This document shows positions 2,356 through 54,465 of a stretch of DNA of 64,000 nucleotides, in pieces. The number at the start of each line of letters is the position of its first letter. Positions within the stretch are counted from its first letter, which is position 1. Made by a program: the position numbers and the translations under genes. Location: sequence record NC_042136.1; one strand, 5' to 3'. The notes beneath the pieces are model-generated. The model made no database searches, had not been told where the DNA came from, and saw nothing but the letters and a program-made list of their open reading frames with translations.

Positions 2356-2383
2356 CTATATAGTCTAGGTGTATAAGTATACA
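2356..2383 (+). promoter_or_regulatory. putative early (virion RNAP) promoter, degenerate copy, with overlapping hairpin
   Basis: CTATATAGT-CTAG-GTGTA resembles five other intergenic copies and the phiKZ early TATATTAC consensus; TGTAT-aagt-ATACA hairpin at 2370-2383. Confidence 0.55.
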
Positions 2384-2420
2384 AGTATTTAATCTACCAA
2401 CTTTTATTAAGGATACTATT

Positions 2421-2867
2421 ATGTCAAACGAAGCTATGAACAAAATCCCAGCTAAATTACCACAAGAGCTACGCAACCTTATGAATGAAGACCAACTTAA
2501 AACCATGGATGAACTCGATGCTGAAATTGAAAAAGCTCGTGAGACTCTAAACAATGAACGTAAAGGCTACAACTCTGCTACTCTACTAGGCGGTCTAGTT
2601 GGTGCAGCTGGTGTTGCTATTACAACTCGCAGCATCGAAGCAGCGGTAACAGGTACCGTAGCCGCAGTAGCTGCTTCTTACCTAACTTCAGAAACCAACC
2701 GCGAAATCCAAACACTAAAAGACACTGGTATTGGTCTAGCGTCTGGTGCTACTGGCGCAGGTCTAGGTTTCCTAGGTTCTAAACTTCTTACTCACTTACT
2801 AGACGGTACTGGTGAGACTGAAACAACTGACGTTCCAGTAACCACTACTGTTACTGAAGAACAATAA
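2421..2867 (+). CDS. glycine-zipper membrane protein, paralog 1
   Basis: acidic/coiled N-terminus then Gly/Ala-rich hydrophobic segments (LLGGLVGAAGVA; GIGLASGATGAGLGFLG); AAGGA RBS. Confidence 0.75.
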   Translation: MSNEAMNKIPAKLPQELRNLMNEDQLKTMDELDAEIEKARETLNNERKGYNSATLLGGLVGAAGVAITTRSIEAAVTGTVAAVAASYLTSETNREIQTLKDTGIGLASGATGAGLGFLGSKLLTHLLDGTGETETTDVPVTTTVTEEQ

Positions 2868-2908
2868 TTAAATCCCTTTAACATCCCCACAACAGAGAGA
2901 TATTCATC

Positions 2909-3391
2909 ATGTCAAACAAAGCAAACAACAACCAAGAAATCGAACGTGTAGAAGCAGCAGTAATGGGTGAAAACACTCAATCATCAGAAGTCGTTTACTC
3001 AACTGAACTCGCCGACGAGAACGGTGGACCTACTGAAGCTGAACTTAACGATTTCCAAGAGAAACTTAAAGAAGCTGTAGAAACACAAGAAGCAAACGCT
3101 AAGGAAGCAAAAGAAACCGTGGAAGCTCTACGTGTTCGTGTAAACCTTAATCGTGTAGCGGGTGGTCTAGTAGGAACTTTAGCATCCGCTTTAGTAACAC
3201 GCAACTACAGTGCAGTTGCTAGTGGCGTATGCGCAACCATCGCAGTAAGTGCTTCGATGGACAATGGACCTAGTGAAGAAGGTGCGTTATACAACACCGG
3301 TGTAGGATTCGCAGCTGGATTCACAACAGGTCTATTAGGTGGTACACTAACTAACTTCCTAACAGGTTCTGATGAATCTGAAGAAGCATAA
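2909..3391 (+). CDS. glycine-zipper membrane protein, paralog 2
   Basis: same layout as the upstream ORF (VAGGLVGTLA; TGVGFAAGFTTGLLGG). Confidence 0.75.
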   Translation: MSNKANNNQEIERVEAAVMGENTQSSEVVYSTELADENGGPTEAELNDFQEKLKEAVETQEANAKEAKETVEALRVRVNLNRVAGGLVGTLASALVTRNYSAVASGVCATIAVSASMDNGPSEEGALYNTGVGFAAGFTTGLLGGTLTNFLTGSDESEEA

Positions 3392-3406
3392 AAGTTGGGT
3401 GGGGAT

Positions 3407-3451
3407 GTTATGGGTCTACGGACTCATAACTCCATCCTCTTTATTTTTTTT
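3407..3451 (+). terminator. intrinsic terminator
   Basis: GTTATGGGTC-tacg-GACTCATAAC stem (one G-U pair) followed by TTTATTTTTTTT. Confidence 0.75.
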
Positions 3452-3471
3452 GTTTAAATCAAGGTTATGAC

Positions 3472-3834
3472 ATGTGTGACGTTTTAAATCATTCAGTTCC
3501 TTTTTTATCACTAGCGTTAGATCTAAGTGAGTTGGATGACTTCAAAGCTAAGCTGCAACAGATCCACGATATGGAGAACCTTCCTTTGGACATCCCGGAC
3601 GATGTAGGTGAACTTTGTAAACACATACTGTACGGGAAACAATGGTACCGAGGTGACTCGGAACTCCCAACCTTAGTGAGTGTCGTGTTCTGGTCTTGGT
3701 TATCGATCGATGGAACCATTAAAGGTATACTAGATCGTGCTCGACGTTATTTCTATTTGTTAGGGGAACTTAACTTTAAGTTCTTTGAACATCTTAATGT
3801 GTTGTACCACGACTATAACAAACACAAACAATAA
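3472..3834 (+). CDS. hypothetical protein
   Basis: 120 aa ORF with AAGG RBS, lying between two terminators. Confidence 0.7.
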   Translation: MCDVLNHSVPFLSLALDLSELDDFKAKLQQIHDMENLPLDIPDDVGELCKHILYGKQWYRGDSELPTLVSVVFWSWLSIDGTIKGILDRARRYFYLLGELNFKFFEHLNVLYHDYNKHKQ

Positions 3835-3836
3835 TA

Positions 3837-3888
3837 CTTACCTACCGCCCTAGTGGACGGTAGGTAAGCTATGTTATTTATTTTTTTT
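3837..3888. terminator. terminator between convergent genes
   Basis: CTTACCTACCG/CGGTAGGTAAG stem (3837-3868), then TTTATTTTTTTT. Confidence 0.75.
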
Positions 3889-6766
3889 ATTCTAAATCAT
3901 CTTCTTCTTCTTCGGTTTCTTCCTCTTGCTCAGATTCTTCAGACTCACCGTCTTTTTCTTCTTCGCTAGGTTCTTCCTCAGATTCTTCAGATTCTTCAGA
4001 CTCACCTTCCGGTGTTTCTTCTTCGTTGAAGTCGTCCTCGAATTCAGGTTGTTCTTCTTCCGCAGGAGCGTCACCGATTGGATCCCCCTCACCATCAGGA
4101 TTGTCTTGGAACTCGTCTTCTAACTCCCCTTTCGGTTGTGGCATCATCTTGACCAGTTTCTCTGAACGCTTATCGAATTGTTTCTTGTATTCCACCATGA
4201 ACAACGACAAGTTTTCATTGAAGTAATCCAGATCATTAAGCAGTGAGTACATGCCACCTTCACGACCTTTGTTGATGATGTCATCGAATGGTGTAGGTAC
4301 GTTGAACAATTTAAAGGCACGGAAACGAATTACCGCAGCAAACTGTCTAGCGATTTCATCAGCGTCAATTTCTTCGACATCAACCCCAGCACGTTTCAGT
4401 AACGGTTCCATCAAGCCCTTCGTTGCTGACATCTCAATCACTTTCTCAGCCCAGTCTTCCGCTAATTCCATTTTCTCTTTAATCTTAGTTACAGACTCCA
4501 TAGTGGTAGGAGCTGGCAACATAACAAAGAAGTTCTGGATAAAGTCATTTAAGATAGTCATGACTTTAGTACGATCATCACCTTCAATAGTCGTTTTAGA
4601 ATCTGGAACCCAAAGGTTCTTAGGTGTATCCATGATGGTGTCGATCAAGAGGTTCATTACGACTTCGTTTACCATCAAGTTTTTACGGATACAATCAGTT
4701 AAGAAATCCCCGAGTTGAGATTGATACATGATCGTTTGGTTACGTAATGTTTCTTGTTCTGCTAACGCTTCTACTTGGAAGTTGTTACCGTTCTCATCTC
4801 GTTCGTCCAGCCAGCTACGCGGTAAACCAAAGAAGTTAGCGATAGAACTTAACAAGTATTGACGAGAATCATCATCCACTCGACGGAAGTTAGTGCGATC
4901 CATTTGGTTCAACTGCATTTGAGGTGCGGTGATGAATTTGTTATCACCAGCTTCCACACGTACTAACAGTGACTGTTCTTTCAACGCATCTACAATCATC
5001 GGCATAGATAACGTCCCAGTGGAGATCAAGTTGTGGACGGTAGGGTTCGATTTAAAGAACTCATAACGAGCCATACTGATGGTAGAGTCTGGATCCGTAT
5101 CTTGGGACTCTAACGCTACCACTAACTCATTACGAGTTTGAGCGTTATCGAGCTGAGCTAGAGCATCCGCAATATCCAATGCCGCCAGACGAGCGATGAA
5201 GTCTTTGGCTTGAGTAGTTAGAGACTCACCGATACCTAAACGGTTATGTTGGAACGCCATGTACGTGAAGTAACATTCTGGAATGTACAACACCCGAGTA
5301 CGTTGTTGTTGGAATGCACGTTCTAGGAACAGTTTCAGTACCGATTCTTCTAGATCGATAGAGATATCTTCTCCATCACCACCAGAATAAATAGACTGAT
5401 ACAATTCTTTCTCAATCTGAGTTTTCGCCAACATTGCGAATTCAGACATGTCGAAGTCACACTCACCACCTTGTTGAACTTTACGTAGATTAGAAATCAA
5501 CATGTTGGTAGTCGTACCACCCGGCTTCTCATCGATCTTGCTGTTTTGTTTAGACAGCGACTGATAGAACTGGTAGTCCTTAGACATTTTCAAGAACTCA
5601 CCGTTATCATCGATCAACGCATAAGCTCCGCGTAGACGTTTAACGTCACCGTGAACGTGAATAGGGATGAAACACTCACTAGGAGGATGATAACCCAACG
5701 GAGTACCCCAAGGTGCTTGAGTGTAAACATTAGGCTTACGAATCGACTGAGTGTGTTTCGTAGCAAAGTTACGAGCACCCGGCATGATTTGTTGTAACGC
5801 TTCTTGTTGAGCTAAGTTCAAGTTCTTGGTTTTAGCACCCGGGTTAGGTTGTTTCTTCCCTTTCTTAAGATCCGCGTTATCTTTGGAATCCAATACATCA
5901 CTTTTCTCGAATCGGTTAGAAATGTAATTCTTTAACGACTCGTTACCTTGGATACGCTCCATGTTAACTTTTAGACGCTGGGTGACGTTACGCATCGCCA
6001 AACAACTCACGTTATCCGTTACCGTGATTCCAAAAGATTTGTCAATGATAGGAAACTCGTAGTTATCTTCGTCCCCTGCACCCCAAATCGATTCCATACC
6101 ACCAACTTTAGAAGCATTAGGATTACGAACAAACCCAACGTTCTTAGCCAGCAATTGTTTGGTTTCTTGATCTTCTTTGAATTCTTTGCGAATACCAGCA
6201 TCTACTTCTTTACGGTAAGTCTCTGCACTAAAAGCTTCATTACCTTCAACTAACTGGTTGCCGTTAATCAGGTTATCCAAAGCAGGACGAGTAATGTTTA
6301 GCTTAACGTAACTACCACTACCCACCAAAAGGTCTCTAACGATGTCAGGGAGTTCCTGCTCGATTTTATAGTCGTTAGTGTAGTATTCACTTAAGATCTT
6401 TAAAAGACTTTCGTGCATTTTGGTGTTTTTGAATTTAGACGAATTCGAATCGTACTCTAAGACATTTTTTCTAGCACCGTTAGGGTGTAAGATTAACGTC
6501 TTCCAAATGATCTCCGCTTTACTAATGTACGGTGTGATTTTCTTTAAGTCTACCGTCGCATTAATTGAGTTAGCGATTATATCGCCTAAGCTTTTGAGCT
6601 TACGGTTCTGAATACGGCGAAGTTGTTCGTCTTCGTCCCCTCTACCAGCGGGACGTTCTTCTTCAACTCGTACATTCAAAATAGCTTCTACTGACTTAGG
6701 TATTTTCTTCACGTTCTTCCGCAACTCGGTGCGGTCGACACGTGTGTTACCTCTGTTTCCTGACAT
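3887..6766 (-). CDS. putative portal protein (phiKZ-like), with long Glu/Asp-rich C-terminal tail
   Basis: 959 aa; the size, acidic C-terminus and head-to-head position opposite conserved virion genes and ruvC match the phiKZ-like portal locus as I recall it; no search run. Confidence 0.7.
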   Translation of the reverse strand: MSGNRGNTRVDRTELRKNVKKIPKSVEAILNVRVEEERPAGRGDEDEQLRRIQNRKLKSLGDIIANSINATVDLKKITPYISKAEIIWKTLILHPNGARKNVLEYDSNSSKFKNTKMHESLLKILSEYYTNDYKIEQELPDIVRDLLVGSGSYVKLNITRPALDNLINGNQLVEGNEAFSAETYRKEVDAGIRKEFKEDQETKQLLAKNVGFVRNPNASKVGGMESIWGAGDEDNYEFPIIDKSFGITVTDNVSCLAMRNVTQRLKVNMERIQGNESLKNYISNRFEKSDVLDSKDNADLKKGKKQPNPGAKTKNLNLAQQEALQQIMPGARNFATKHTQSIRKPNVYTQAPWGTPLGYHPPSECFIPIHVHGDVKRLRGAYALIDDNGEFLKMSKDYQFYQSLSKQNSKIDEKPGGTTTNMLISNLRKVQQGGECDFDMSEFAMLAKTQIEKELYQSIYSGGDGEDISIDLEESVLKLFLERAFQQQRTRVLYIPECYFTYMAFQHNRLGIGESLTTQAKDFIARLAALDIADALAQLDNAQTRNELVVALESQDTDPDSTISMARYEFFKSNPTVHNLISTGTLSMPMIVDALKEQSLLVRVEAGDNKFITAPQMQLNQMDRTNFRRVDDDSRQYLLSSIANFFGLPRSWLDERDENGNNFQVEALAEQETLRNQTIMYQSQLGDFLTDCIRKNLMVNEVVMNLLIDTIMDTPKNLWVPDSKTTIEGDDRTKVMTILNDFIQNFFVMLPAPTTMESVTKIKEKMELAEDWAEKVIEMSATKGLMEPLLKRAGVDVEEIDADEIARQFAAVIRFRAFKLFNVPTPFDDIINKGREGGMYSLLNDLDYFNENLSLFMVEYKKQFDKRSEKLVKMMPQPKGELEDEFQDNPDGEGDPIGDAPAEEEQPEFEDDFNEEETPEGESEESEESEEEPSEEEKDGESEESEQEEETEEEEDDLE

Positions 6767-6786
6767 AACACCCTCTTGGATAAATT

Positions 6787-9224: not shown

Positions 9225-9242
9225 GTAAAGGATTCCTTTAAC

Positions 9243-25120: not shown

Positions 25121-27598
25121 ATGATTGCAGAATTACGTTTAAAAAATAACGTGGGATTGTTGACCAAAGGTACCAAGTCAGTCACGTTAGACTTAGCCGA
25201 CCTAGTGAACATCTTCATGGGTCGGAATGGGTTTGGTAAAACCAGTATTTTGAAAGAGTGCCACCCCTTACCACCGGATAACAGCGATTACGTAAAAGGT
25301 GGTTACAAATACGTGAAGTGGATTGTGTCTCCACAAGAGTTCTACATTATGGAATCTCATACCGGTTCGAGTTCAACACACTCCTTTAAAAAGAATGGGG
25401 TAGAAGAACTCAACACTGGTGGAACACTAACGGTTCAACGTGATTTGTGTTTACAATACTTCGGTCTGACACCAAACATGGTAAAATACATGTCTGGTTT
25501 GAAGGTCAATAATTTATTCACGACGCTGTCTACCGCAACTCGTAAACAGTTGTTCATGGATATTTATCCTAACGACACTCGTTACGCGTTAAATGTCTAC
25601 AATAAAATCAAAGCAGAGTTACGTAACTGTATTGGTGCGATTAAAAACCAACACAAACGCTTAGCGGAAGAAAACCAACGAGCTGCGACATTAAGCTCAA
25701 CCAGCATACCGGAGTTAGAACAAAAAATCGGAGATCTGGATAACCGCATTAAAGAAGCGATGGTGTTAAGCGGGATGTTGGCTAATGAACAAAACGTTCA
25801 GCAACAAACTCGGGATTTGATTCATAAGTTCATTAAGTTAACTAAAGATTTAGTTATCGGTAACGTGACTACCTTAGAAGGCCCAAATGAGTTGATGGCG
25901 AAGCACGACCAGTGTAAACGCATCATGGAGAAATGTCAGCATCGTATTACGGTGACTCGCACTAAGTTAACAACTTTAATGGAAACGTTATCTGGACTTA
26001 ACTACGTTAATGACACTCCGGAGGTTTTAGAACAACAGCAACAACACTTGATTACTGTACAAAAACATGATCAGGGTATATTCAATGATGCTGATCGTTT
26101 GGTGCGTAACTTGTTCCCAAACCTCACTGAAGAACAACTCGACATCATTGCACGTTCAGCAGACTCTTTGTGTCCTAAGTTAGAACAAGTTGTGCAAGCG
26201 TCCAGTGAGTCCATGACGTTATTGGATTACAGATTACTCCAAGAACAAATGGAGAAAAACATCAGCCACGGTCGTACTTTGAAATACGAGGTTGAAGAAC
26301 TTCGTCATGCGTTGAAACACTTTGATATGACTGAGGACATGAAGTGTCCAGAATGTAAGACGGAATTTAAGCCCGGGTTTGATCTTAAAGACGTAGAACA
26401 AAAGCGTAAGGACTTACAACGTTTAGAACAACAACTTAAAAACGTGGTATCGGAATACCGTAGTTTGGATGCTAAGTTGAAAAACGATGAAGAGTTCTTT
26501 AATACGCTAACTCCGGTCGTGGAAGAAGCGAAGATGTTCAGGGACGAGGGAAACACGTTATTGAATGTACTTAAAGATTACGGAGTGGGTTACAAAGACT
26601 GTTCTCCGTTAGTAAACGTATTCCGTGCTGCGGTAGAGCGTCGTACTCGTGGTAAGTTGATCAAAGAACACCAAGACGAAATCGAATCCTTAGGGAGACG
26701 TATCGCATCTCTGCGTCGTAATGACGTGGAAGAGTTAACTCGTCAACTGACCGAATACGAAACCATCCTAGCAAGTGAACAACGTACTTTACGTCACTTT
26801 AACGAACAACTGGAAACCATTGACTATCGTTTAGAATCTATTAATGCTCGTGAACTCAAAGTCGACCAATTGGTTGAAATGAGAGATGAGATATTGGATT
26901 CATTTCGAGATCAAGGTCGTTGGTTGTTAAAGCAAGCAACCGATCACGCGGTAGCTGAATGGGTACCAGCTAAAGATAACTTCATGCAGATGTTGATTCG
27001 TGGTCGCAGTCTAGCGTCGGTAATTGAATCTATCGAGTTGGACATTCAACGCTTAGAGTCACGTAAAGCAAAACTCCAAGTGCTCCAAGACAACGTGTGT
27101 CCTAATAAAGGTTTGATCGGTAAAATGATGCAAGACTTCATTAAAACCGTGACTGCTAATATGAACGCAACGATTAGACAAGTCTTCACCACACCTTTAT
27201 TCGTTTTACCTTGTATTAATAAGAAAGGTGATTTGGATTACAACTTCCCAGTCATTAACTCTATTGATGGTAAACCTTCAAAAGATGTGAGTGATTGTAG
27301 TGGCGGTGAGCAAGACATGATTAACTTAGCGTTCCGTATGATTTTGTTACGGTATAAAGCGAAGAATCGTTTTCCTTTGATGTTGGATGAAGTCGGGGTT
27401 AAACTCGATGCTTATCACCAACAGCGTTTGTTCGACTATATCCTTAACTTATCTACTTCGGGTGAGGTTAATCAAATCTTAATGGTCTCTCATTTCTTTT
27501 CACACACTAGTATGTTTAAAAATGCTAACGTCATTGCATTGAACTCCGAAGGGATTACGGTCCCAACCGACGCTAACCAGAAAGCCGTTTTCAAATAA
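25121..27598 (+). CDS. sbcC: SbcC/Rad50-like SMC-family ATPase
   Basis: Walker A GRNGFGKTS, long coiled coil with a CPEC zinc hook, signature CSGGE, Walker B LMLDE, H-loop VSH. Confidence 0.9.
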   Translation: MIAELRLKNNVGLLTKGTKSVTLDLADLVNIFMGRNGFGKTSILKECHPLPPDNSDYVKGGYKYVKWIVSPQEFYIMESHTGSSSTHSFKKNGVEELNTGGTLTVQRDLCLQYFGLTPNMVKYMSGLKVNNLFTTLSTATRKQLFMDIYPNDTRYALNVYNKIKAELRNCIGAIKNQHKRLAEENQRAATLSSTSIPELEQKIGDLDNRIKEAMVLSGMLANEQNVQQQTRDLIHKFIKLTKDLVIGNVTTLEGPNELMAKHDQCKRIMEKCQHRITVTRTKLTTLMETLSGLNYVNDTPEVLEQQQQHLITVQKHDQGIFNDADRLVRNLFPNLTEEQLDIIARSADSLCPKLEQVVQASSESMTLLDYRLLQEQMEKNISHGRTLKYEVEELRHALKHFDMTEDMKCPECKTEFKPGFDLKDVEQKRKDLQRLEQQLKNVVSEYRSLDAKLKNDEEFFNTLTPVVEEAKMFRDEGNTLLNVLKDYGVGYKDCSPLVNVFRAAVERRTRGKLIKEHQDEIESLGRRIASLRRNDVEELTRQLTEYETILASEQRTLRHFNEQLETIDYRLESINARELKVDQLVEMRDEILDSFRDQGRWLLKQATDHAVAEWVPAKDNFMQMLIRGRSLASVIESIELDIQRLESRKAKLQVLQDNVCPNKGLIGKMMQDFIKTVTANMNATIRQVFTTPLFVLPCINKKGDLDYNFPVINSIDGKPSKDVSDCSGGEQDMINLAFRMILLRYKAKNRFPLMLDEVGVKLDAYHQQRLFDYILNLSTSGEVNQILMVSHFFSHTSMFKNANVIALNSEGITVPTDANQKAVFK

Positions 27599-27607
27599 AA
27601 TACAAAC

Positions 27608-27667
27608 CTATATTATCAGGGTGTTGTGAGTGAATCGTTACTCTAAGTGCGTTTCTATAGACACCCT
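27608..27667 (+). promoter_or_regulatory. putative early promoter with overlapping inverted repeat
   Basis: AAACCTATATTAT-CAGG-GTGT; AGGGTGT (27618-27624) is complementary to ACACCCT (27661-27667). Confidence 0.7.
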
Positions 27668-27691
27668 AAATTCGATTAAAGGAACCACATT

Positions 27692-27976
27692 ATGAGTCAC
27701 CATCAACCCCAATCAAAACCACCCGTCATTTTGCGAGGTACTTACGACCCTAACGGGATTATCCAACTGAGTCCTACTGGCACTGAGTTAATTAAGATCG
27801 AGTTCACCAAAGTCCATTACCAATGGCAAGCCGCGGTGTACGTGAATTCGATGTGTATCGGTTACGTGACCTTTGGGATGAACAACGAACGTGTAGTGAG
27901 TACCTTTGCCCAAGGTTTCGCTGATGATGGTCGAGCAGAAGCGTCCATCCACAACATCGTAGCAGGCATTCATTAA
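27692..27976 (+). CDS. hypothetical early protein
   Basis: 94 aa, AAGGA RBS, first gene after the promoter motif. Confidence 0.7.
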   Translation: MSHHQPQSKPPVILRGTYDPNGIIQLSPTGTELIKIEFTKVHYQWQAAVYVNSMCIGYVTFGMNNERVVSTFAQGFADDGRAEASIHNIVAGIH

Positions 27977-34301: not shown

Positions 34302-34353
34302 TAACCCTACCTCCCGTTAAGGAGGTAGGGTTATTATGGTTGATTATTTTTTT
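34302..34353 (+). terminator. intrinsic terminator
   Basis: TAACCCTACCTCC-cgttaa-GGAGGTAGGGTTA, then TTATTTTTTT about 10 nt later. Confidence 0.75.
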
Positions 34354-34445
34354 ACTGGACACGCTATTATTTTGGGGGAGGGGGTCAAAGCTCAAATCCG
34401 TAGGATAATTTAAGATAATTATAAGAAAGATAAATAAATATAAAT

Positions 34446-34475
34446 CTATATTATCAGAGTGTAATGTCCAACACT
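34446..34475 (+). promoter_or_regulatory. putative early promoter with overlapping hairpin
   Basis: CTATATTAT-CAGA-GTGTA after an AT-rich tract; AGTGT (34458-34462) is complementary to ACACT (34471-34475). Confidence 0.7.
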
Positions 34476-34502
34476 TATTTAACCTTAATAGAGGAAATTA
34501 TT

Positions 34503-35447
34503 ATGAAGAACAAATATGCCAAAGACCTAGGCAAAGATATCGAAGCTTACATACAAGCCCATCCTGAGGCCAACCGCATTTCTCAGATATGTGAACACTT
34601 TGGTATTGGTCGTATGGTCTTTGCTCAAGCCATCAAAACCTTCACCCATTTGACCGGTAAAGAGTTTATCAACGTTCAACGTAGGAAAGCCGTGATCGAA
34701 CATCTTAAGAAAAAGAATGCAACGGTAGAGTCAGTAGCCGAAGTCATTGGGATGAAATGTTTGTTCAGCACACAATCTGTCATACGTAAATGGTTTGGTC
34801 AACCTTTAGGTCACTTAGTTCATCTGGCTAATATCAACCGCCTAGATAAATTCTTAAAGTGTGAACATCAAGTTTATCGTCAATTCCTAGCGGAAGAAAT
34901 GATGGACTACATTGATAACCATAATGGGAAGGTTAACATCAATTCTGATCTTACTGGAGAGTTCCAGATGGGACAAACCATGATCAATACGATATGGCGA
35001 GAATACAGTCCTGATGAGACGTTGGTGTTGTATATCCGTATGACTAAAGCGCAATACGTTCGTAACTCATTCCTTAAAGAACAATGTACCATGGAAGAAC
35101 TCCTTAAACGCACTGGGTTTAATCGTACGTTCATCGAGGCGCTCCATAAAGAGCTCTACGGTATCACGTTAGGAGCGTGGGTGAAAAAGAACTACAAACA
35201 TCCACAAATCCGTAATCCTGATGGCAAGGGATTTACGTTGGTTCCGGCAGACACCTTAGATCGCATAACTTCAGCGATTAAGGATGAGCACACTTCGTTA
35301 CAAGAAGTCAGTGACGCGGTAGGGTATTCCATTTACATCGTGTTACGTATTGTTCAGTTTTACACGGATAAGAACTTCGCCCAGTATCGTAAAGAGGTCA
35401 TCGAAAAGAAACTTCATTTGAATAAAACTGAGACGTACTATGTATGA
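34503..35447 (+). CDS. multi-AraC-domain HTH DNA-binding protein
   Basis: start moved to ATG 34503 (GAGGA RBS); two complete AraC/XylS-type double-HTH domains plus a further HTH, with no ligand-binding domain. Confidence 0.7.
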   Translation: MKNKYAKDLGKDIEAYIQAHPEANRISQICEHFGIGRMVFAQAIKTFTHLTGKEFINVQRRKAVIEHLKKKNATVESVAEVIGMKCLFSTQSVIRKWFGQPLGHLVHLANINRLDKFLKCEHQVYRQFLAEEMMDYIDNHNGKVNINSDLTGEFQMGQTMINTIWREYSPDETLVLYIRMTKAQYVRNSFLKEQCTMEELLKRTGFNRTFIEALHKELYGITLGAWVKKNYKHPQIRNPDGKGFTLVPADTLDRITSAIKDEHTSLQEVSDAVGYSIYIVLRIVQFYTDKNFAQYRKEVIEKKLHLNKTETYYV

Positions 35448-37998: not shown

Positions 37999-39159
37999 AT
38001 GAACAGTTACATCCATAAACTTAAAGCCGTGATTAACCCACACCTACCAATAAACGGTCAAACTATCGTACCGGGGTTTCATCATCAGTTCTTACTTGCC
38101 GAAGAAAGTATCTTACCGCAATGGTCTAAAGTGTTGAAACAAGACGGGGTAATCAAAGCGGTAGCGGAGTTCAACTGGTTAACCGATGCTAAAGCAGATG
38201 TGGACACCCTGCACTCAATGGGATGTCATCATCGTGATGAGTTTATAGAAACTGAGAACGTGGTGGTTAAACAAACCCTAGACACAGATGGTAAGTTGAA
38301 CGTAGCGGCTGAGCGTTTCCGTGAAGCGGGTCTAGAAATCGAGTCTATCGAAGATCTACAACAAGCCTTTATCAACAACGGTATGATGACAAAACACCTT
38401 ACCATGGAAGCGTGTATAGAAGAAATGGGAATCGAAGATGAAGTTGAACATGTACTTATCGCGAAAGGTGAAACTGGACCTAACCACGGTGTCGCGTTCA
38501 GTCGTCCTGCTACTAACGGGTTACTGTTGTTCCAAGACCCGGAGCTGATCCCATCTAAAACGAATACCTTAGAAGAAAACCTAGAGATGGGGCGTCTGAA
38601 ATACACTCCGAAACAGATCATGATGTCTTTCATTAAGTTTCCTATTCCGTTCCGTAAACGTTTAGAATATTTCTTGAACGTATTCGAAGGTGACTTCGGT
38701 CCCGCTAAAGACGTGGTAAAACTCTTAGTGGAAGGTAAAGAGTACGGGGACATCCCAGACATCAATTATTTCTTCGATTACACCATGTATCAAAACATGG
38801 ACCACGAAGGCTGCATTACTTTAATCCTAGACGCGATTGATTGCCCTAAACATTATTTGACTGCACGTTTGCACATGGCGAATCTGTTCCCTATCACGGA
38901 ATACGCTCATGAGGTGCTCCCGTACGCTATTTACGGTCAGTTCGTAGCTACCCGCATGGGTGCGTTATACCACAGCTTCGTGTTAACGGTAGACGGTCTG
39001 GTGGTCGATGAAGAAGAACAACGTCTGGTTAATGAAGCGTGTGATACCGAAGACCTTAGTGCTAAGGTACCATCCATGTCCTTCAATCCAGATTTCCGTC
39101 CTGGGGAAACTCGTCTTTCACTCGACGACCTTAACATCCGTGATTACATTGGTAACTAA
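37999..39159 (+). CDS. hypothetical protein
   Basis: 386 aa, GAGG RBS, no motif recognised. Confidence 0.8.
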   Translation: MNSYIHKLKAVINPHLPINGQTIVPGFHHQFLLAEESILPQWSKVLKQDGVIKAVAEFNWLTDAKADVDTLHSMGCHHRDEFIETENVVVKQTLDTDGKLNVAAERFREAGLEIESIEDLQQAFINNGMMTKHLTMEACIEEMGIEDEVEHVLIAKGETGPNHGVAFSRPATNGLLLFQDPELIPSKTNTLEENLEMGRLKYTPKQIMMSFIKFPIPFRKRLEYFLNVFEGDFGPAKDVVKLLVEGKEYGDIPDINYFFDYTMYQNMDHEGCITLILDAIDCPKHYLTARLHMANLFPITEYAHEVLPYAIYGQFVATRMGALYHSFVLTVDGLVVDEEEQRLVNEACDTEDLSAKVPSMSFNPDFRPGETRLSLDDLNIRDYIGN

Positions 39160-39171
39160 ATTTATTCAAAC

Positions 39172-39203
39172 CTATATTACTCGGGTGTAACAATCCCGAG
39201 TAA
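39172..39203 (+). promoter_or_regulatory. putative early promoter overlapped by a perfect 9-N9-9 inverted repeat
   Basis: AAACCTATATTAC-TCGG-GTGTA; TTACTCGGG-tgtaacaat-CCCGAGTAA at 39177-39203. Confidence 0.75.
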
Positions 39204-45495: not shown

Positions 45496-45530
45496 TAAAA
45501 GGGGTAAGTCTCCCCTATATTTTTACAAGT

Positions 45531-45567
45531 CTATATTACTAAGGTGTAAGAGTTCACATTTTTACAC
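45531..45567 (+). promoter_or_regulatory. putative early promoter with overlapping hairpin
   Basis: CTATATTAC-TAAG-GTGTA; GTGTAA (45544-45549) is complementary to TTACAC (45562-45567). Confidence 0.75.
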
Positions 45568-46322: not shown

Positions 46323-46324
46323 AC

Positions 46325-46357
46325 TATACCTAGAGCACGATGAGTGCTCTAGGTATA
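46325..46357 (+). terminator. perfect 14-bp hairpin
   Basis: TATACCTAGAGCAC-gatga-GTGCTCTAGGTATA followed by TTATTTT. Confidence 0.65.
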
Positions 46358-47718: not shown

Positions 47719-47805
47719 ATTTTCACGGTGTGTGCCGATTTTATTGATCAAAAAACTCCACTTCTCTCAAGCAGAAAATCAATAAAAATCAGTAAGGTAC
47801 ACACT

Positions 47806-48261: not shown

Positions 48262-48275
48262 GTATGTAAGGTTGT

Positions 48276-48803: not shown

Positions 48804-48806
48804 GAT

Positions 48807-49268: not shown

Positions 49269-49287
49269 CTCATAAAAGGATTATTCC

Positions 49288-49791: not shown

Positions 49792-49792
49792 C

Positions 49793-49845
49793 ATAACTAC
49801 CCCTCCCTTTGCGGGGAGGGGTAGTTATTACGCTTTTTATTTTTT
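49793..49845. terminator. terminator between convergent genes
   Basis: ATAACTACCCCTCCC-tttgcg-GGGAGGGGTAGTTAT, then TTTTTATTTTTT. Confidence 0.8.
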
Positions 49846-52609
49846 AGAACATATCCATAATAGCGTTGACGGTTTCTCCGTAACCACTAGGTAATGAGTG
49901 TTCGTCCCACAAACTAAACTCATCATCGAACAGATCTTCCATACCTGCAACCCCTACCAGTGTGACGTCCTCACCGTGTTGCACTGCCATGATCTCAGCA
50001 ACTTGTTGTTTAGACCACGACATGATGTCGATGTTACGGCTGGTGACGTTTTCTCGTCCTTGAGTGTCGAGCTCAAAGATATAAGCAAACGTTGGTGCGG
50101 TTTGTCCTTGACGGTGAACACGAGCGATGGTTTGTGTTAAGATGTAATCACGCCATGGTGCGTTCATACATAACACTTGGTTAGCCATCAACAACGGATA
50201 ACCGGTGGACAATGATTTGAACGTAGTCACTAACGGGTTCTTAGATTCACGTTCATCGAACTCTTTTACGAGCTTATCACGTTCATTGGTATTATCACCG
50301 TGAACAAAGATCGTATCGTAACCTTGTTTGGTTAAGTAGTCGTCACATTCATAGACTACGTCGATGTGGTCAGTAAAGATCAACGTTTTCTTCTCTACGT
50401 GATCGATGTACTTAGGAAGGTCCGCGTATTCCACTAATCCCTTAACAGCTTCTATACGAGCTTTACCTAGCACGTTACCTAACGCTTCCCCTTGGATTTT
50501 TAACCCAACGTACTTAACGATAGACTTGGCGTTACGGAAATGTTTGCGTTCTTTAGGTGGCATCCATTCTTCGATATCCAGTTCTATTTCTTTAGCGCGT
50601 TTAGATAACTCCGCATCCGTGAAGTTGTTGTAACCATCTTTACGGAACTTATTAACAATACGTAAATACTCATCAAGTTCATTTAGTGATTGTTGATCAT
50701 TACGTGCTGTGCAGTGTTTACGGTAGTCATCGATGATCTGGTTAAAGTAACCGACGTACTTATCCATGTTTTTGTTATAGTACGAATAACGATCTTGAAT
50801 GTAAGTGCGCATCTGGTTACGAACTGAGTCTAAGGTAAAGTGTTCCGCATGAGGGACTTTAACTTTAACTCGTTCGGCCTCAGGGGCATCCCCTAATCCA
50901 CTCAATACCGAGATGGTATATTTTTCTGCACCAATACGGTGAGCGAGCAATTGGTTCAGTTTGTCACGAGAACGTCCGTAACCGTCTAGGAAGGCTTTTC
51001 TAACATTACCCTTGAAGAAGTTATCGATTAAACAGAACACGGCGTAGGATTCTTTACCGAGGCCTTTAATCGGTGTCCCTGACATGGGTAATGTATCAGT
51101 GAAACCTAACGTCTCATTAAACTCGATGAGTTTCTTAGTACGTTTAGAGTTCGGATCGTTGAAGTTGTGACATTCATCGATGATCATTTTAAACGCAGGG
51201 TTACCACGGTTCCATTGTTCAATTTGACGAAGGTATTTCTCACACAACGGGTTCAACATGAAATCGTAATGGAAAAAGTAATATTCATCATCTTTTGACG
51301 GTGGACGATCCATTTTGGTAGTCCAATACTTCGGTGGGGTATGCCATACTTCGTGCTTGATGTTGTTAGACATATGGTTAGCCCAAACTTCATCAATGAC
51401 GTTCAGTGGTACAAAACCAACGGTCTTACCTTTCGGTAATGACTCAGACCACATCAGAGACAAACTGGTATTGTGAGTCACGATGTAATCATCGGTGATG
51501 TACAGGTGTTCTTCGTGATCCACCATGATGCATTGAGTTTGTTCTTGCGCAACCGGTTCGATGGAAACAATCTTAAGTCGATTAAAACCAAAGTGTGCTT
51601 CTACTAACCAACGGTCACCGGATGGGAAAATACGACACTGATGTCCAAGTCCTCGGGTGATGTCTACGATCAAACGAGCTAAACGTTCATCATTGAAATA
51701 ACCATGTGTTTGACCCGGCTCTAAAATACCGCGTACCCAAGAGTACAATTCATCATTAGTACACTTGTGGTGGAAATCTGGATCGTAATGAGTACCCCCT
51801 ACTCGTAACATCATCCCTTGGTTGTACCAGCTTGGAATGAGTTCTTGTGGGATAACATGATCGATCATAGGGATGTAATAATCGGTCTCTGTCAAGGTAT
51901 CCATTAACTCGTGGGTTTCTTTTACTGACCACTCTTGACCATCGTAGACCTTCCATAAGTGTTCAGGGTTACACTTGGTTTTACGACCATCACGGAAAGT
52001 AATTTCTACGACGTCGGTAATACCTTGAGGATAAACACCGGTTACGGTAGTATAACCACCATCAGGTGTTTCAATCACTTTACCTACTCGCATGTCCCCC
52101 ATGGTCTCCCAACCTCCGGGTACTTTAATCTTAGCAGACAGCGGTTGAGCTTTACCAGACCCTGCACGACCATCCAACAGCAATCCTTTAAGGTGATACG
52201 ACGCTTTACGAGATGGGTACGTTTCTAAAAAGCGTAACTGTGGTTCTAATGGTTTGAGTTTAACGCGCTTTTGCATGGCTTTAAAATCAAACGTAGAAGG
52301 TTTAGGAACGATGGTATCACGGATCCATGTTTCTTGTTGAATTAATTCTAATAACTTGGTGAGGTCACGACGATTAGTACGTGTGGTTTTTAACTGTAGT
52401 AACTTAGTTATTAGGTGATTAAGTTCCAAAAGGAAAAAAGACTTAACTTCAAACTTACGAGAATTGATACGGCTCAGCATGTACTTCGAGATCGTCGTCG
52501 TACCGTAAAGTCGGATTAAATCTTGTTCTAAGTGTCGCCAAGACACCCCACTTATTACGGCTCGGTTTTCTTCTACTTCTATTGCCGGACCGAATAATCC
52601 ACTAAACAT
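49844..52609 (-). CDS. SF2 (SNF2/DEAD-like) helicase interrupted by an intein
   Basis: Walker A GRAGSGK/T split by the intein; DECH, MSGTP, QTIARVHRQGQ. Confidence 0.88.
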   Translation of the reverse strand: MFSGLFGPAIEVEENRAVISGVSWRHLEQDLIRLYGTTTISKYMLSRINSRKFEVKSFFLLELNHLITKLLQLKTTRTNRRDLTKLLELIQQETWIRDTIVPKPSTFDFKAMQKRVKLKPLEPQLRFLETYPSRKASYHLKGLLLDGRAGSGKAQPLSAKIKVPGGWETMGDMRVGKVIETPDGGYTTVTGVYPQGITDVVEITFRDGRKTKCNPEHLWKVYDGQEWSVKETHELMDTLTETDYYIPMIDHVIPQELIPSWYNQGMMLRVGGTHYDPDFHHKCTNDELYSWVRGILEPGQTHGYFNDERLARLIVDITRGLGHQCRIFPSGDRWLVEAHFGFNRLKIVSIEPVAQEQTQCIMVDHEEHLYITDDYIVTHNTSLSLMWSESLPKGKTVGFVPLNVIDEVWANHMSNNIKHEVWHTPPKYWTTKMDRPPSKDDEYYFFHYDFMLNPLCEKYLRQIEQWNRGNPAFKMIIDECHNFNDPNSKRTKKLIEFNETLGFTDTLPMSGTPIKGLGKESYAVFCLIDNFFKGNVRKAFLDGYGRSRDKLNQLLAHRIGAEKYTISVLSGLGDAPEAERVKVKVPHAEHFTLDSVRNQMRTYIQDRYSYYNKNMDKYVGYFNQIIDDYRKHCTARNDQQSLNELDEYLRIVNKFRKDGYNNFTDAELSKRAKEIELDIEEWMPPKERKHFRNAKSIVKYVGLKIQGEALGNVLGKARIEAVKGLVEYADLPKYIDHVEKKTLIFTDHIDVVYECDDYLTKQGYDTIFVHGDNTNERDKLVKEFDERESKNPLVTTFKSLSTGYPLLMANQVLCMNAPWRDYILTQTIARVHRQGQTAPTFAYIFELDTQGRENVTSRNIDIMSWSKQQVAEIMAVQHGEDVTLVGVAGMEDLFDDEFSLWDEHSLPSGYGETVNAIMDMF
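51470..52150 (-). mobile_element. 227-aa class-3-type intein with a degenerate endonuclease linker
   Basis: begins AQPL after GSGK; block B KCNPEHLW, block F TQCI, ends IVTHN followed by T(+1). Confidence 0.88.
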
Positions 52610-52651
52610 ATAGACCTCTTATTAAACATTAAAAAGTGAAAGGAAATTAAA

Positions 52652-54010
52652 ATGACTAAGTCAGTAAAACCTAATCATGAACTTTGGAAAATCTTCGCTC
52701 ATATCGCTGAAGGTCTAGGTAACATGACTTTCTTTATCCGTGGTGAAGACGAAGAAGGTAACCCGGGTCTTTATCATACCGGTGTTGCGTTGGAAGACAT
52801 GCAAGTCACGATTACTCCTCACGAGTATCTCCCAATGACACGCATTCGTTTCGACCTTAATCTACCGGCTGACCTTACGGACTACCTGCAATCAGACGAA
52901 GCTAAGAACGATTACAACGCCGTTCAGCTTACCAACTACCTAACCACACGCGGTGATATCGAGTACGTGATCTACAACGAGATGATGGGCAGCATTCTGG
53001 AAGAGTTGAAAGGTTGCCGTCAAGCACTACTAGCACAAACCCAAGAAGCTCGTAATGGTGCCACTCAAATGGTGAACTATCTGGGCAACTTGGAAATGAA
53101 CACCATGGATCCTAAAGTAGCGAAGAAAGCAAACCGCTACTACCCGTTGGTGATCAACCGTACTCCTAACGTTTTGGTTCACACCCCATCTGATGAGTGG
53201 ATTGATGAACACTTTGGTGACATGACCTCAGGTGACATCACACGAGCGGAGTCTATCGTAACACGCAACGCTAAGCTCATCGGTAAACGTTTGGAGAACA
53301 TCGCTCACCTCATTAACGATTGGGGTAAAACAACAGAAATTCCTAAAGACCACGATTTATGGTTCTCTCTTAACATCGAAGATCATAAAATCTCTCTCGG
53401 TCTAGATCGTCAACCTTACCGCTCGGCAGAATCGTTTATGATTGAGCGTTCACCGGTGGATTACGATGAATGGGATGATGCAGCAGACATCGCTATTATT
53501 GATTTAGTGAATTCTGAAATCGATGAAATGAACATCATTGTGGCGAATTTGCTAAACCACAACACAGGCTACGTGTCACTGAACAAAGATATCGAGCAGA
53601 TGTACATTCGTGCGATTCACCATCCGATTGCTAAACATACAGTTCGTGTTTGGGAATTCGATGACGTGTGTCCAGCAGGTCGTAAGTTGATCGATGAAGA
53701 GATCTCTGAGATCATGCAATTGGTTGATGGTAAAGCGAAAGAACTCGAAGCGGATGTGAAACTGGATATTTCTAATATGTATCTTCATCAAGCTGCGGAA
53801 GGTCAAAACTTCATCCTCACTAAAGACCATCAAGTGGTGGCTGATCGTTGTCAGACTTATTCTGGTAGCTTCTTCGATTCACTTCAACAACATTTGTTTG
53901 ATGTGGAAACTCCATTGTTCGGTCCTTATACACACGTTACTCCAGCGGACCTAGCTAACGAAAAATTCATTAGTGAAGAAGATCTACTAAACCCACCGAC
54001 AGTACATTAA
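52652..54010 (+). CDS. hypothetical protein (acidic)
   Basis: 452 aa, AAGGA RBS, divergent from the helicase. Confidence 0.8.
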   Translation: MTKSVKPNHELWKIFAHIAEGLGNMTFFIRGEDEEGNPGLYHTGVALEDMQVTITPHEYLPMTRIRFDLNLPADLTDYLQSDEAKNDYNAVQLTNYLTTRGDIEYVIYNEMMGSILEELKGCRQALLAQTQEARNGATQMVNYLGNLEMNTMDPKVAKKANRYYPLVINRTPNVLVHTPSDEWIDEHFGDMTSGDITRAESIVTRNAKLIGKRLENIAHLINDWGKTTEIPKDHDLWFSLNIEDHKISLGLDRQPYRSAESFMIERSPVDYDEWDDAADIAIIDLVNSEIDEMNIIVANLLNHNTGYVSLNKDIEQMYIRAIHHPIAKHTVRVWEFDDVCPAGRKLIDEEISEIMQLVDGKAKELEADVKLDISNMYLHQAAEGQNFILTKDHQVVADRCQTYSGSFFDSLQQHLFDVETPLFGPYTHVTPADLANEKFISEEDLLNPPTVH

Positions 54011-54062
54011 TCGATTTTATGGGGTCGTAGACCTTACGACCTCCTAATCATAGGAGATAAAA

Positions 54063-54353
54063 ATGTCAGCGGTTTTAGAAGAAATTCAATCAGCGGGTAA
54101 AGTGAGTCGTGGTGAAACAGTCTTGCTTCGTGGTAAATTTAAAGGCTTAGCGCAACCAACTTTGGTTAAAGTTCGCTTTAACGGTGAGTCGGTTGATGCA
54201 GATGTTTACACAGACCAACAAGGTTACTTCGTGACTGAATTCCCAGCTAACGTGACTAAGGTCGGCATGTACCCTATTACCGTAGAACTAAAAGAGTCTA
54301 CGGAAGCGGGTACCGTAGTGACAGGCGAAACTGAAGTTCGCATCACTCGCTAA
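54063..54353 (+). CDS. small single Ig-like beta-sandwich protein (putative)
   Basis: 96 aa, all-beta pattern; TDQQGYF resembles the xD.NG.F turn of Ig-like repeats. Confidence 0.55.
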   Translation: MSAVLEEIQSAGKVSRGETVLLRGKFKGLAQPTLVKVRFNGESVDADVYTDQQGYFVTEFPANVTKVGMYPITVELKESTEAGTVVTGETEVRITR

Positions 54354-54362
54354 CATGAAGTG

Positions 54363-54408
54363 GTAACTGGTATCCTACGGGGTACCAGTTACTTCTTTAT
54401 TTTTTTTT
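54363..54408 (+). terminator. intrinsic terminator
   Basis: GTAACTGGTATCC-tacg-GGGTACCAGTTAC, then TTTATTTTTTTTT. Confidence 0.8.
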
Positions 54409-54431
54409 GCTTTTAGTAAATTTTTACAAAC

Positions 54432-54465
54432 CTATATTACTTATGTGTATGAGCGTCATACATAA
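54432..54465 (+). promoter_or_regulatory. putative early promoter with overlapping hairpin
   Basis: AAACCTATATTAC-TTAT-GTGTA; TGTATGA-gcg-TCATACA at 54446-54462. Confidence 0.75.

What the first reader, a model, noticed from the sequence alone, without database searches (positions are those of the whole stretch)
2356..54465. Six bipartite early-promoter motifs, each overlapped by an inverted repeat at the conserved GTGT(A)
Seen: CTATATWRY-N4-GTGT(A) occurs at 2356, 27608, 34446, 39172, 45531 and 54432, always intergenic and upstream of accessory-gene clusters. Established: the phiKZ early (virion RNAP) promoter consensus is TATATTAC. Also seen: in five copies the GTGT/TGTA element pairs with a downstream complement (TGTAT/ATACA, AGGGTGT/ACACCCT, AGTGT/ACACT, GTGTAA/TTACAC, TGTATGA/TCATACA) while loops and outer arms differ completely; the sixth has a 9-bp inverted repeat across the same position. 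Structure conserved without sequence conservation suggests selection. Inference: early mRNAs start with a GUGUA-initiated stem-loop that protects against RppH/RNase E or tags the mRNA for exit from the early infection vesicle or phage nucleus, or the DNA extrudes a hairpin read by the virion RNAP, as in N4.
Basis: partly seen in the sequence, partly recalled or inferred. Interest (0 to 1): 0.72.

Follow-up and report, generated by a model that had tools for sequence, protein, structure and literature searches.

The report
Jumbo-phage early promoters with start-site hairpins
The six motifs are early promoters of the giant, nucleus-forming Vibrio phage VP4B, read by the RNA polymerase it carries in its particle; several are followed by small, evolutionarily maintained stem-loops at the predicted start of the mRNA, an extra not seen in the model phage phiKZ.

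Summary
The window is the last 64 kb of Vibrio phage VP4B, a chimallin-encoding phiKZ-type jumbo phage. The six CTATATWRY-N4-GTGT sites are six of 24 sharply defined sites in the genome, all on the + strand.

They are not truly bipartite. Each is one ~33-bp conserved element (-30..+3) that matches the phiKZ/AR9 virion-RNAP early promoter. GTGTA is the initiator: T-1/G+1 lies 6 nt after TATATWAY, as in phiKZ and AR9.

Structure is concentrated in the first ~30 nt (mean z about -1; 8 of 24 sites below -1.64).

Across six related phages, pairing is kept more often than expected:
- 54432: 100% paired, three covarying pairs.
- 27608: covariation present.
- The 2356 family and the chimallin leader also keep pairing.
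- 34446 is not conserved.
- 39172 is kept only in close relatives.

phiKZ itself shows no enrichment. Some covarying pairs lie upstream of the predicted start, which is unexplained without TSS data.

Most likely these are 5'-proximal mRNA stem-loops, possibly stabilisers. An N4-like DNA hairpin promoter is not supported.

The parts
2341..2373 (+). Early promoter 1 (-30..+3). Predicted TSS is G at 2371. Upstream of gp150-152.
   Evidence: Motif hit. PWM score 39.8 bits. Orthologous promoter present in pTD1, Aphrodite1, USC-1 and 2 TSL-2019.
2370..2383 (+). Stem-loop TGTAT-aagt-ATACA. From +1 it is GUAU/AUAC.
   Evidence: In the paralogue/orthologue family the consensus hairpin starts at +1, with both-sided changes at two inner pairs.
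27593..27625 (+). Early promoter 2. Predicted TSS is G at 27623. It abuts the stop of the Rad50-like gene gp167 (27598). Upstream of gp168 through the DNA ligase cluster.
   Evidence: 35.7 bits. No terminator-like site lies upstream.
27617..27668 (+). Leader helix: -6/-5..+2 (AGGGTGT) pairs with +39..+45 (ACACCCT), enclosing inner stems.
   Evidence: RNAalifold on six lineages: 95.5% of cells paired. Position -5 is AU:3/UA:3; position -3 is AU:3/GC:2/GU:1. Covariation score 0.303 versus 0.181 in shuffles (3/500 reach it).
34431..34463 (+). Early promoter 3. Predicted TSS is G at 34461. Upstream of gp176 / RNase H / RNA ligase.
   Evidence: 38.1 bits.
34458..34475 (+). Inverted repeat AGTGT-aatgtcca-ACACT. 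Probably chance.
   Evidence: Present in VP4B. Kept in pTD1 only through a G.U pair. No consensus structure across four lineages (0 pairs).
39157..39189 (+). Early promoter 4. Predicted TSS is G at 39187. Starts 13 nt after gp181 ends. Upstream of GroEL through thymidine kinase.
   Evidence: 42.8 bits.
39177..39203 (+). 9-bp inverted repeat TTACTCGGG / CCCGAGTAA. The 5' arm is -10..-2, which is untranscribed by the predicted TSS.
   Evidence: Arms are intact and the loop has changed in pTD1. G:C becomes A:U at -4 in phiKT1028. Not kept in Aphrodite1/USC-1. A paralogous 11-bp version exists at genome position 38910.
45500..45516 (+). Intrinsic-terminator-like hairpin plus T-run, directly upstream of promoter 5.
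45516..45548 (+). Early promoter 5. Predicted TSS is G at 45546. Upstream of gp188-194.
   Evidence: 41.8 bits.
45544..45567 (+). Stem-loop GTGTAA-N12-TTACAC. From +1 it forms an 8-bp hairpin that includes G.U pairs.
   Evidence: z = -2.65. Stem kept and loop changed in pTD1. An equivalent hairpin exists in phiKT1028. No compensatory change was seen.
54362..54393 (+). Strong terminator-like hairpin (14 bp) plus T-run, upstream of promoter 6.
54417..54449 (+). Early promoter 6. Predicted TSS is G at 54447. Upstream of gp198-206.
   Evidence: 42.4 bits.
54444..54464 (+). Stem-loop -3..+6 with +10..+18. The core is TGTATGA-gcg-TCATACA.
   Evidence: Six lineages: 8 pairs, 100% of cells paired. Both-sided changes at -3, +3 and +5. 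Covariation score 0.508 versus 0.308 (0/500 shuffles reach it). Loops differ: gcg, atg, cca, aatc, atgt.

Best explanation
The six sites are early promoters of Vibrio phage VP4B. They are recognised by the virion-packaged multisubunit RNA polymerase that a phiKZ-type (chimallin-encoding) jumbo phage injects with its DNA.

Each promoter is one ~33-bp element: T/A-rich -30..-24, TTTCA at -23..-19, CTATATWAY at -15..-7, YwRG at -6..-3, and GTG at -2..+1. By homology with AR9 and phiKZ, transcription starts at the second G of GTGTA, with T at -1. This start is inferred, not shown.

About a third to a half of the 24 promoters in the genome carry a short stem-loop that begins at or a few bases before that start. 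Four or five of the six in this window do.

The pairing is maintained by selection at several of them. The most likely role is a 5'-proximal mRNA stem-loop that slows 5'-end-dependent decay of early messages (RppH/RNase E type). This role is inferred. Where the promoter abuts the upstream gene (27608, 39172), the structure may instead form in read-through polycistronic RNA. The hairpins are not part of promoter recognition.
For: Identity of the phage:
- The window is 100% identical to VP4B 172054-236053.
- Chimallin and split RNAP genes are annotated.
- gp017 matches phiKZ gp178 at E = 8e-139, and gp094 matches phiKZ gp74 at E = 3e-41.

The promoter:
- 6 hits against 0 expected.
- The PWM finds 24 sites at 24.9 bits or more, all on the + strand. 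Nothing scores between 10 and 24.9, and the - strand maximum is 1.9.
- Conservation is continuous from -30 to +3. T-1 is 22/23 and G+1 is 22/23.
- Sites precede chimallin and the nvRNAP subunit gp093.
- The AR9 consensus is AAATATATATTAT-(6N)-G+1, and phiKZ has a conserved TSS 6 nt downstream.
- 22 phiKZ TATATTAC sites show the same T then purine at positions 6 and 7.
- The same motif is present in five related vibriophages.

The hairpins:
- Fold z-scores: -5..+30 gives mean -1.01 (p = 0.001) and +1..+30 gives -1.10, with 8 of 24 below -1.64. The +31..+90 control is not significant.
- Pairs of the VP4B 5' hairpin kept in relatives: pTD1 82/87 versus 71.1+-3.0 (p = 0.0005); Aphrodite1 50/66 versus 43.0 (p = 0.026); 2 TSL-2019 32/42 versus 26.4 (p = 0.029).
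- Coding-region controls for the same test are not significant.
- Covariation at 54432, at 27608 and in the 2356 family.
Against: - No transcript data exist for this clade, so the start site is an inference.
- Half the promoters have no hairpin.
- The 34446 hairpin is not conserved.
- Some promoters are paralogous cassettes, which inflates the counts.
- Only about 4-6 lineages are available, and they are related to one another.
- Several covarying pairs (-3, -5 at 27608; -3 at 54432; -4 at 39172) lie upstream of the predicted start. They cannot be part of a primary transcript that begins at +1.
- phiKZ early leaders show no enrichment (mean z = -0.03), so any function is specific to this clade.
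- The stabiliser role is entirely inferred.
Confidence: 0.6

Rival explanations
1. The promoters are real, but the hairpins have no function. They would be chance complements to a G/T-rich initiator, plus sequence inherited through promoter-cassette duplication and recent common ancestry.
For: - The independent 17 sites are not enriched.
- Hairpins flush with +1 are not above shuffles.
- -5..+60 is not significant.
- 34446 is not conserved.
- phiKZ shows nothing.
- Paralogous cassettes exist.
Against: - The pair-maintenance tests exceed a null that the coding-region controls do not exceed.
- Loops change while stems stay.
- There are both-sided changes with G.U intermediates.
- 8 of 24 sites have z below -1.64, against about 1.2 expected.
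Confidence: 0.2
2. The helices that span the promoter (27608, 39172, and the outer pairs of 54432) form in read-through polycistronic RNA made from upstream promoters. There they would act as intercistronic processing, stabilising or insulating structures. Their overlap with the early promoter would be incidental.
For: - Covarying pairs lie at -6..-2, upstream of the predicted start, with G.U only in the coding sense.
- 27608 and 39172 directly abut the upstream gene with no terminator between them.
- In Aphrodite1 and 2 TSL-2019 the 27608 helix is followed by a T-run.
Against: - 54432 has a strong terminator-like hairpin about 40 nt upstream, yet it still shows upstream pairing.
- The GroEL repeat is lost in the Aphroditevirus lineage.
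- There is no evidence of read-through or of processing.
Confidence: 0.25
3. The stem-loops are 5'UTR attenuators, or premature terminators that release short RNAs just after the promoter. Such elements have been reported for many phiKZ 5'UTRs.
For: - phiKZ has many terminators inside 5'UTRs that give short abundant RNAs (PMC10914365).
- The 54432 hairpin is followed by TAAATTTTTT.
- Its phiKT1019 orthologue is followed directly by a T7 run.
Against: - The terminator scan did not flag any of the six start-site hairpins.
- The stems are short and AT-rich.
- Most lack a U-tract, and the U-tracts that exist are not conserved among orthologues.
Confidence: 0.08
4. An N4-like mechanism: the inverted repeat extrudes as a DNA hairpin, and the virion RNAP reads that hairpin as part of the promoter.
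For: Inverted repeats straddle the start site at 27608, 39172 and genome position 38910. Their arms are conserved in close relatives.
Against: - The polymerase is a multisubunit phiKZ-type enzyme, not an N4-type single-subunit one.
- 11-13 of 23 promoters have no such repeat.
- Loop length ranges from 3 to 36 nt, and the position ranges from -12 to +1.
- G.U-type intermediates would be mismatches in duplex-derived DNA hairpins.
- The 33-bp linear sequence is itself highly conserved, which is enough for recognition.
Confidence: 0.03
5. The motifs are host sigma-70 promoters, or promoters of the non-virion RNAP (middle or late).
For: TATATT/TATTAT resembles a -10 hexamer. Two weak sigma-70-like matches overlap the sites.
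Against: - There is no conserved -35 at the right spacing.
- Sigma-70-like matches are fewer than in shuffles (27 versus 36).
- The motif matches the vRNAP consensus of phiKZ/AR9, not their late motifs (TATG; AACA-N6-TA/G).
- The sites precede nvRNAP and chimallin genes, which must be made before nvRNAP exists.
Confidence: 0.03

Closest known systems
phiKZ early (virion RNAP) promoters
   Same: - AT-rich extended element with a TATATTAC core.
- T then purine start 6-7 nt downstream.
- Conserved -10/-20/-30 regions.
- One strand only, in front of early genes including chimallin.
- About 20-30 per genome.
   Different: - VP4B has a fixed C before TATAT.
- It has a TTTCA box at -23..-19.
- It has extra conservation at -4..-2 (RGG).
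- A subset carries conserved start-site stem-loops, whereas 22 phiKZ sites show none above chance.
Bacillus phage AR9 early promoters, AAATATATATTAT-(6N)-G+1
   Same: Same TATATTAT core and the same 6-nt spacing to a conserved G start.
   Different: AR9 has a uracil-containing, very AT-rich genome. No start-site hairpins are reported for it. Its upstream half also differs.
5'-terminal stem-loop mRNA stabilisers of bacteria and phages (ompA-type leaders; cited from general knowledge, not tested here)
   Same: Short hairpin at or within a few nt of the 5' end. The structure rather than the sequence is conserved. Loops are free to vary.
   Different: No half-life data exist here. Several helices include bases upstream of the predicted start. 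Only a subset of the early mRNAs carries one.
Coliphage N4 virion-RNAP hairpin promoters
   Same: Virion-carried polymerase, early genes, and inverted repeats at the promoter.
   Different: - The N4 enzyme is a single-subunit polymerase that needs a defined small hairpin at every promoter (one search list; PMC4496689 abstract).
- Here the enzyme is multisubunit.
- Here the repeats are optional and variable.
phiKZ 5'UTR premature terminators / 5'UTR-derived small RNAs
   Same: Structured elements immediately downstream of phage promoters.
   Different: The phiKZ elements are GC-rich terminators with a conserved motif and a TTAT tail. The VP4B hairpins are short, AT-rich and mostly lack a U-tract.

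Membership tests
phiKZ-type early (virion RNAP) promoter | The phage encodes a virion-type multisubunit RNAP, plus a non-virion RNAP and chimallin. | tested here: met
   gp017 versus phiKZ gp178: E = 8e-139, 31% identity over 955 aa. gp094 versus phiKZ gp74: E = 3e-41. 'Nuclear shell protein' gp077 is annotated.
phiKZ-type early (virion RNAP) promoter | Extended AT-rich consensus with a TATATTAC/TATATTAT core, highly conserved among copies. | tested here: met
   24 copies score 24.9-44.1 bits and nothing else scores above 10. Position matrix. phiKZ sites for comparison.
phiKZ-type early (virion RNAP) promoter | Transcription starts at a conserved purine 6 nt downstream of the core. | not testable with these tools
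   Sequence only: T is 22/23 at the sixth position after the core and G is 22/23 at the seventh, as at phiKZ sites and in the AR9 consensus. No transcript data exist for this clade.
phiKZ-type early (virion RNAP) promoter | Sits in front of early genes, including nvRNAP subunits and the nuclear shell gene. | tested here: met
   Copies lie 88 nt upstream of chimallin gp077 and 48 nt upstream of nvRNAP gp093. All are intergenic and co-oriented with the downstream genes.
phiKZ-type early (virion RNAP) promoter | Active immediately after infection, without host RNAP or new protein synthesis. | not testable with these tools
   Needs infection experiments.
N4-type hairpin promoter | Every promoter carries a small hairpin of defined size at a fixed position, which the polymerase recognises. 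| tested here: not met
   Only 10-12 of 23 copies have an inverted repeat near the start. Loops are 3-36 nt, and the 5' arms start anywhere from -12 to +1.
N4-type hairpin promoter | Giant single-subunit virion RNAP. | tested here: not met
   [quoted passage not shown] I did not search specifically for an N4-type enzyme.
5'-terminal stem-loop mRNA stabiliser | The stem begins within about 0-2 nt of the mRNA 5' end. | tested here: inconclusive
   With the predicted +1, 7-8 of 24 leaders fold into a hairpin flush with the end. This is not above shuffles (p = 0.2), and the true 5' ends are unknown.
5'-terminal stem-loop mRNA stabiliser | Pairing is maintained in evolution while the sequence and loops change. 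| tested here: met
   (maintenance above the null; coding controls negative). (both-sided changes). Not met for 34446.
5'-terminal stem-loop mRNA stabiliser | Lengthens mRNA half-life by blocking 5'-end-dependent decay. | not testable with these tools
   Needs half-life measurements with stem mutants.
Intrinsic terminator / 5'UTR attenuator | G+C-rich stem immediately followed by a U-tract. | tested here: not met
   None of the six start-site hairpins is listed by the terminator scan, whereas true terminator-like sites upstream of 45531 and 54432 are. Only the phiKT1019 orthologue of 54432 has a directly adjacent T7 run.

The most novel reading that the evidence does not exclude
The helices that straddle the start site, with covariation at positions upstream of the homology-predicted +1, would be a cis-acting part of early initiation by a sigma-less multisubunit virion RNAP. 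One version: a coding-strand (non-template DNA or nascent RNA) structure keeps the start region open or controls re-initiation. Another: this clade starts transcription several bases closer to the -10-like element than any characterised multisubunit polymerase.
Probability: 0.07. Interest if true: 0.8.

Novelty: new variant of a known kind. Interest (0 to 1): 0.4.

Why it matters
Early transcription of nucleus-forming jumbo phages happens before the phage nucleus exists, and a polymerase with no known promoter-specificity factor carries it out.

A crisp set of 24 promoters in a Vibrio clade, with six genomes to compare, gives a defined ~33-bp recognition element and a predicted initiator. These can be tested in vitro. 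No promoter description for these vibriophages turned up in the papers I read.

If the start-site stem-loops do stabilise or mark early mRNAs, they would be a clade-specific layer of control over messages such as chimallin, GroEL and DNA-metabolism genes. They would also be useful parts for engineering these aquaculture-relevant phages.

If the hairpins are neutral, the result is still a clean promoter annotation that corrects two start codons.

Tried and rejected
- A full-text search for TATATTAC returned only unrelated primer hits.
- A single-protein search of IMG/VR found only VP4B itself. Alignment-based searches returned the same six known genomes plus two distant contigs.
- Both metagenome scans found nothing, so alignments stay at 3-6 lineages.
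- Rfam and tRNA scans of the window were empty.
- My first phiKZ site regex was too strict, finding 7 sites. I redid it and found 22.
- The test for hairpins flush with +1 was not significant.
- The 34446 hairpin was rejected as conserved structure.
- The alignment for 45531 was distorted by an insertion in phiKT1028, so it gives no covariation evidence.
- An N4-like DNA hairpin, a sigma-70 promoter and a classical attenuator were each considered and judged unlikely (see rival explanations).
- The AACCTT..AGGA motif over the ribosome-binding site is only weakly enriched, 5 versus 1.4, and I did not pursue it.

Full report
**What the window is.** A 21-kb stretch is 100% identical to Vibrio phage VP4B (NC_042136.1), and the window is the last 64 kb of that record. 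VP4B belongs to Gorgonvirinae/Tidunavirus. Its record annotates a nuclear shell protein (chimallin) and many split RNAP beta-type genes. gp017 is homologous to the phiKZ virion-RNAP subunit gp178 (E = 8e-139), and gp094 to the non-virion subunit gp74 (E = 3e-41).

**Checking the observation.**
- CTATATWRY-N4-GTGT occurs six times, at the stated coordinates, all on the + strand, with 0 expected.
- The bare 9-mer is less special: 7 observed versus 3.2 expected.
- All six sites are intergenic.
- All six inverted repeats exist as described.
- Against shuffles of the downstream 45 nt, five of the six have a repeat of at least 5 bp over GTGTA, versus 1.5 expected (p about 0.003).

**What the motif is.**
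- I assembled the whole genome and found 25 CTATATWRY sites on the + strand and 1 on the - strand. Of these, 23 are intergenic with a shared extended context.
- Their position matrix shows unbroken conservation from -30 to +3: T-30, A-29, TTTCA (-23..-19), C-15 TATAT, W, A, Y, then Y-w-R-G, then G-2 T-1 G+1 T A.
- A PWM built from this finds 24 sites at 24.9 bits or more. Nothing scores between 10 and 24.9, and the - strand maximum is 1.9 bits. So this is one long promoter, not a bipartite motif.
- AR9 early promoters are AAATATATATTAT-(6N)-G+1, and phiKZ and phiR1-37 have a conserved start 6 nt downstream of the core (PMC5312081).
- phiKZ and 201phi2-1 early promoters are conserved at -10, -20 and -30.
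- In 200 kb of phiKZ I found 22 TATATTAC sites with AT-rich upstream sequence. Position 6 after the core is T at 21 of them and position 7 is a purine at the same 21; the one exception reads C then T.
- VP4B fits this exactly. TATATWAY, then four bases, then G-T, then G. The second G of GTGTA is the predicted start, and GTGTA is the initiator (-2..+3).
- Copies precede chimallin and the nvRNAP subunit gp093, as early promoters should.
- The same motif is present in pTD1, Aphrodite1, USC-1, 2 TSL-2019, an unnamed 237.5-kb genome, phiKT1028 and phiKT1019.
- The papers I read on these vibriophages do not describe promoters.

**Are the hairpins more than chance within VP4B?** The evidence is mixed.
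- Inverted repeats of at least 5 bp over GTGTA: all 23 sites, 10 versus 4.7 expected (p = 0.01).
- Fold energies against dinucleotide shuffles:
  - -5..+30: mean z = -1.01 (p = 0.001); the other 18 sites give -0.58 (p = 0.04).
  - +1..+30: mean z = -1.10, with 8 of 24 below -1.64.
  - +31..+90 control: -0.22, not significant.
- Hairpins exactly flush with the predicted +1 occur at 7 of 23 sites, versus 4.9 expected (p = 0.2).
- phiKZ early leaders show nothing: mean z = -0.03, flush hairpins 4/22 versus 3.0 expected.

**Comparative evidence.** I took the VP4B 5'-proximal structure and asked how many of its pairs survive in relatives. The null re-places the observed differences at random within +4..+50.
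- Hairpins starting by +3:
  - pTD1: 82/87 kept versus 71.1+-3.0 (p = 0.0005).
  - Aphrodite1: 50/66 versus 43.0 (p = 0.026).
  - 2 TSL-2019: 32/42 versus 26.4 (p = 0.029).
- The same test on three coding windows is not significant (p = 0.14-0.97), so the test is calibrated.

Site by site:
- **54432.** Six lineages, 8 pairs, every cell paired. Both-sided changes at -3, +3 and +5, and five different loops. Covariation score 0.508 versus 0.308 (0/500 shuffles reach it).
- **27608.** A long-range helix pairs -6..+2 with +38..+45. Position -5 is AU:3/UA:3; position -3 is GC/GU/AU. 3/500 shuffles reach the observed score.
- **2356 family.** The consensus hairpin starts at +1, with both-sided changes at two inner pairs.
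- **45531.** The stem is kept and the loop has changed in pTD1. phiKT1028 has an equivalent hairpin. No compensatory change was seen.
- **39172.** The 8-9-bp repeat is kept in three Tidunavirus lineages with one compensatory change, but is lost in the Aphroditevirus lineage.
- **34446.** No conserved structure.
- **Outside the window.** The chimallin leader and the leaders at genome positions 153629 and 166694 keep hairpins from +1 in all lineages, with compensatory changes.

**What does not fit.** Several covarying pairs lie upstream of the predicted start: -3 and -5 at 27608, -3 at 54432, -4 at 39172. The intermediates are G.U only in the coding sense, which points to RNA, or possibly to non-template DNA. 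A primary transcript from +1 cannot contain those 5' arms.
- 27608 and 39172 abut the upstream gene with no terminator, so read-through RNA could carry the full helix.
- 54432, however, has a strong terminator-like hairpin 40 nt upstream.
- In the pooled test, pairs with a 5' partner in -6..-1 are maintained in pTD1 (75/77 versus 65.6) but not in the more distant lineages (p about 0.4). Pairs from +1 onward are still maintained in Aphrodite1 (p = 0.02).
- I cannot resolve this without TSS data.

**Mechanism.** The step from motif to virion-RNAP early promoter rests on homology and placement, and is strong. The start at the second G is inferred from AR9/phiKZ geometry and the T-1/G+1 conservation. 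Selection on pairing is shown for some sites, weak for others and absent for one.

The function is inferred. A stem-loop at or near the 5' end is the classical way to slow 5'-end-dependent decay (general knowledge, not tested here). That suits messages made in the cytoplasm-exposed early phase. Rivals are listed separately with their weights.

The N4 analogy fails for three reasons. The enzyme is multisubunit. Half the promoters lack a repeat. The repeats vary in size and position.

**Verdict.** It is wrong about the RNA starting with GUGUA, about the hairpins being universal and about an N4-like mechanism.

The promoters are new members of a known class. The clade-specific, partly conserved start-site stem-loops make this a modest new variant of that class.

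Noticed in passing
window 34464-34503: The annotated start of gp176 (ATG 34464) lies 3 nt after the predicted transcription start. An in-frame ATG at 34503 has a GAGGA ribosome-binding site and corresponds to the GTG start used in pTD1. The annotated start is probably 13 codons too long.
   Followed up: partly
window 27692-27731: gp168 is annotated from 27731. An upstream in-frame ATG at 27692 has an AAGGA ribosome-binding site and matches the start of the Aphrodite1 orthologue (82 nt after the motif).
   Followed up: partly
window 34302-34333, 46325-46357, 3836-3869: Long (13-15 bp), nearly perfect hairpins are flagged as terminator-like on both strands. They are probably bidirectional terminators between gene blocks.
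   Followed up: no
VP4B genome position 116714 (outside the window; L005:16685-16717): A 24th promoter copy with a variant core (CGATATTAT) was found only by the PWM (27.7 bits). It lies upstream of gp096.
   Followed up: no
window 2316-2378 and VP4B genome 124324-124386 (L005): An almost identical ~60-bp cassette (T-run, aacatacagtttatttcagat, CTATATAGT ctag GTGTA taag) is repeated in VP4B. It is present three times in pTD1. Some copies have a TTGACA-like hexamer near -41. Promoter modules appear to have been duplicated.
   Followed up: partly
window 34481-34495 and several early 5'UTRs elsewhere in the genome: Leaders often contain AACCTT, a few bases, then AGGA. CCTT can therefore pair with the AAGG of the ribosome-binding site. 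In the window there are 5 matches versus 1.4 expected.
   Followed up: partly
phiKZ NC_004629.1 45568-45620 (L060): The phiKZ early promoter in front of chimallin (PHIKZ054) is followed by a hairpin flush with the mapped-type start (-8.8 kcal/mol, z = -2.4). The VP4B chimallin promoter has one too. Most other phiKZ early leaders have none.
   Followed up: partly
VP4B genome position 38307 onward (outside the window; L003): The deposited VP4B record contains a run of 167 N, consistent with its 'partial genome' description.
   Followed up: no
whole VP4B genome, - strand: No sequence on the - strand scores above 1.9 bits with the promoter PWM, and CTATATWRY occurs 25 times on + versus once on -. 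Promoter-like sequences may be avoided on the non-coding strand.
   Followed up: no
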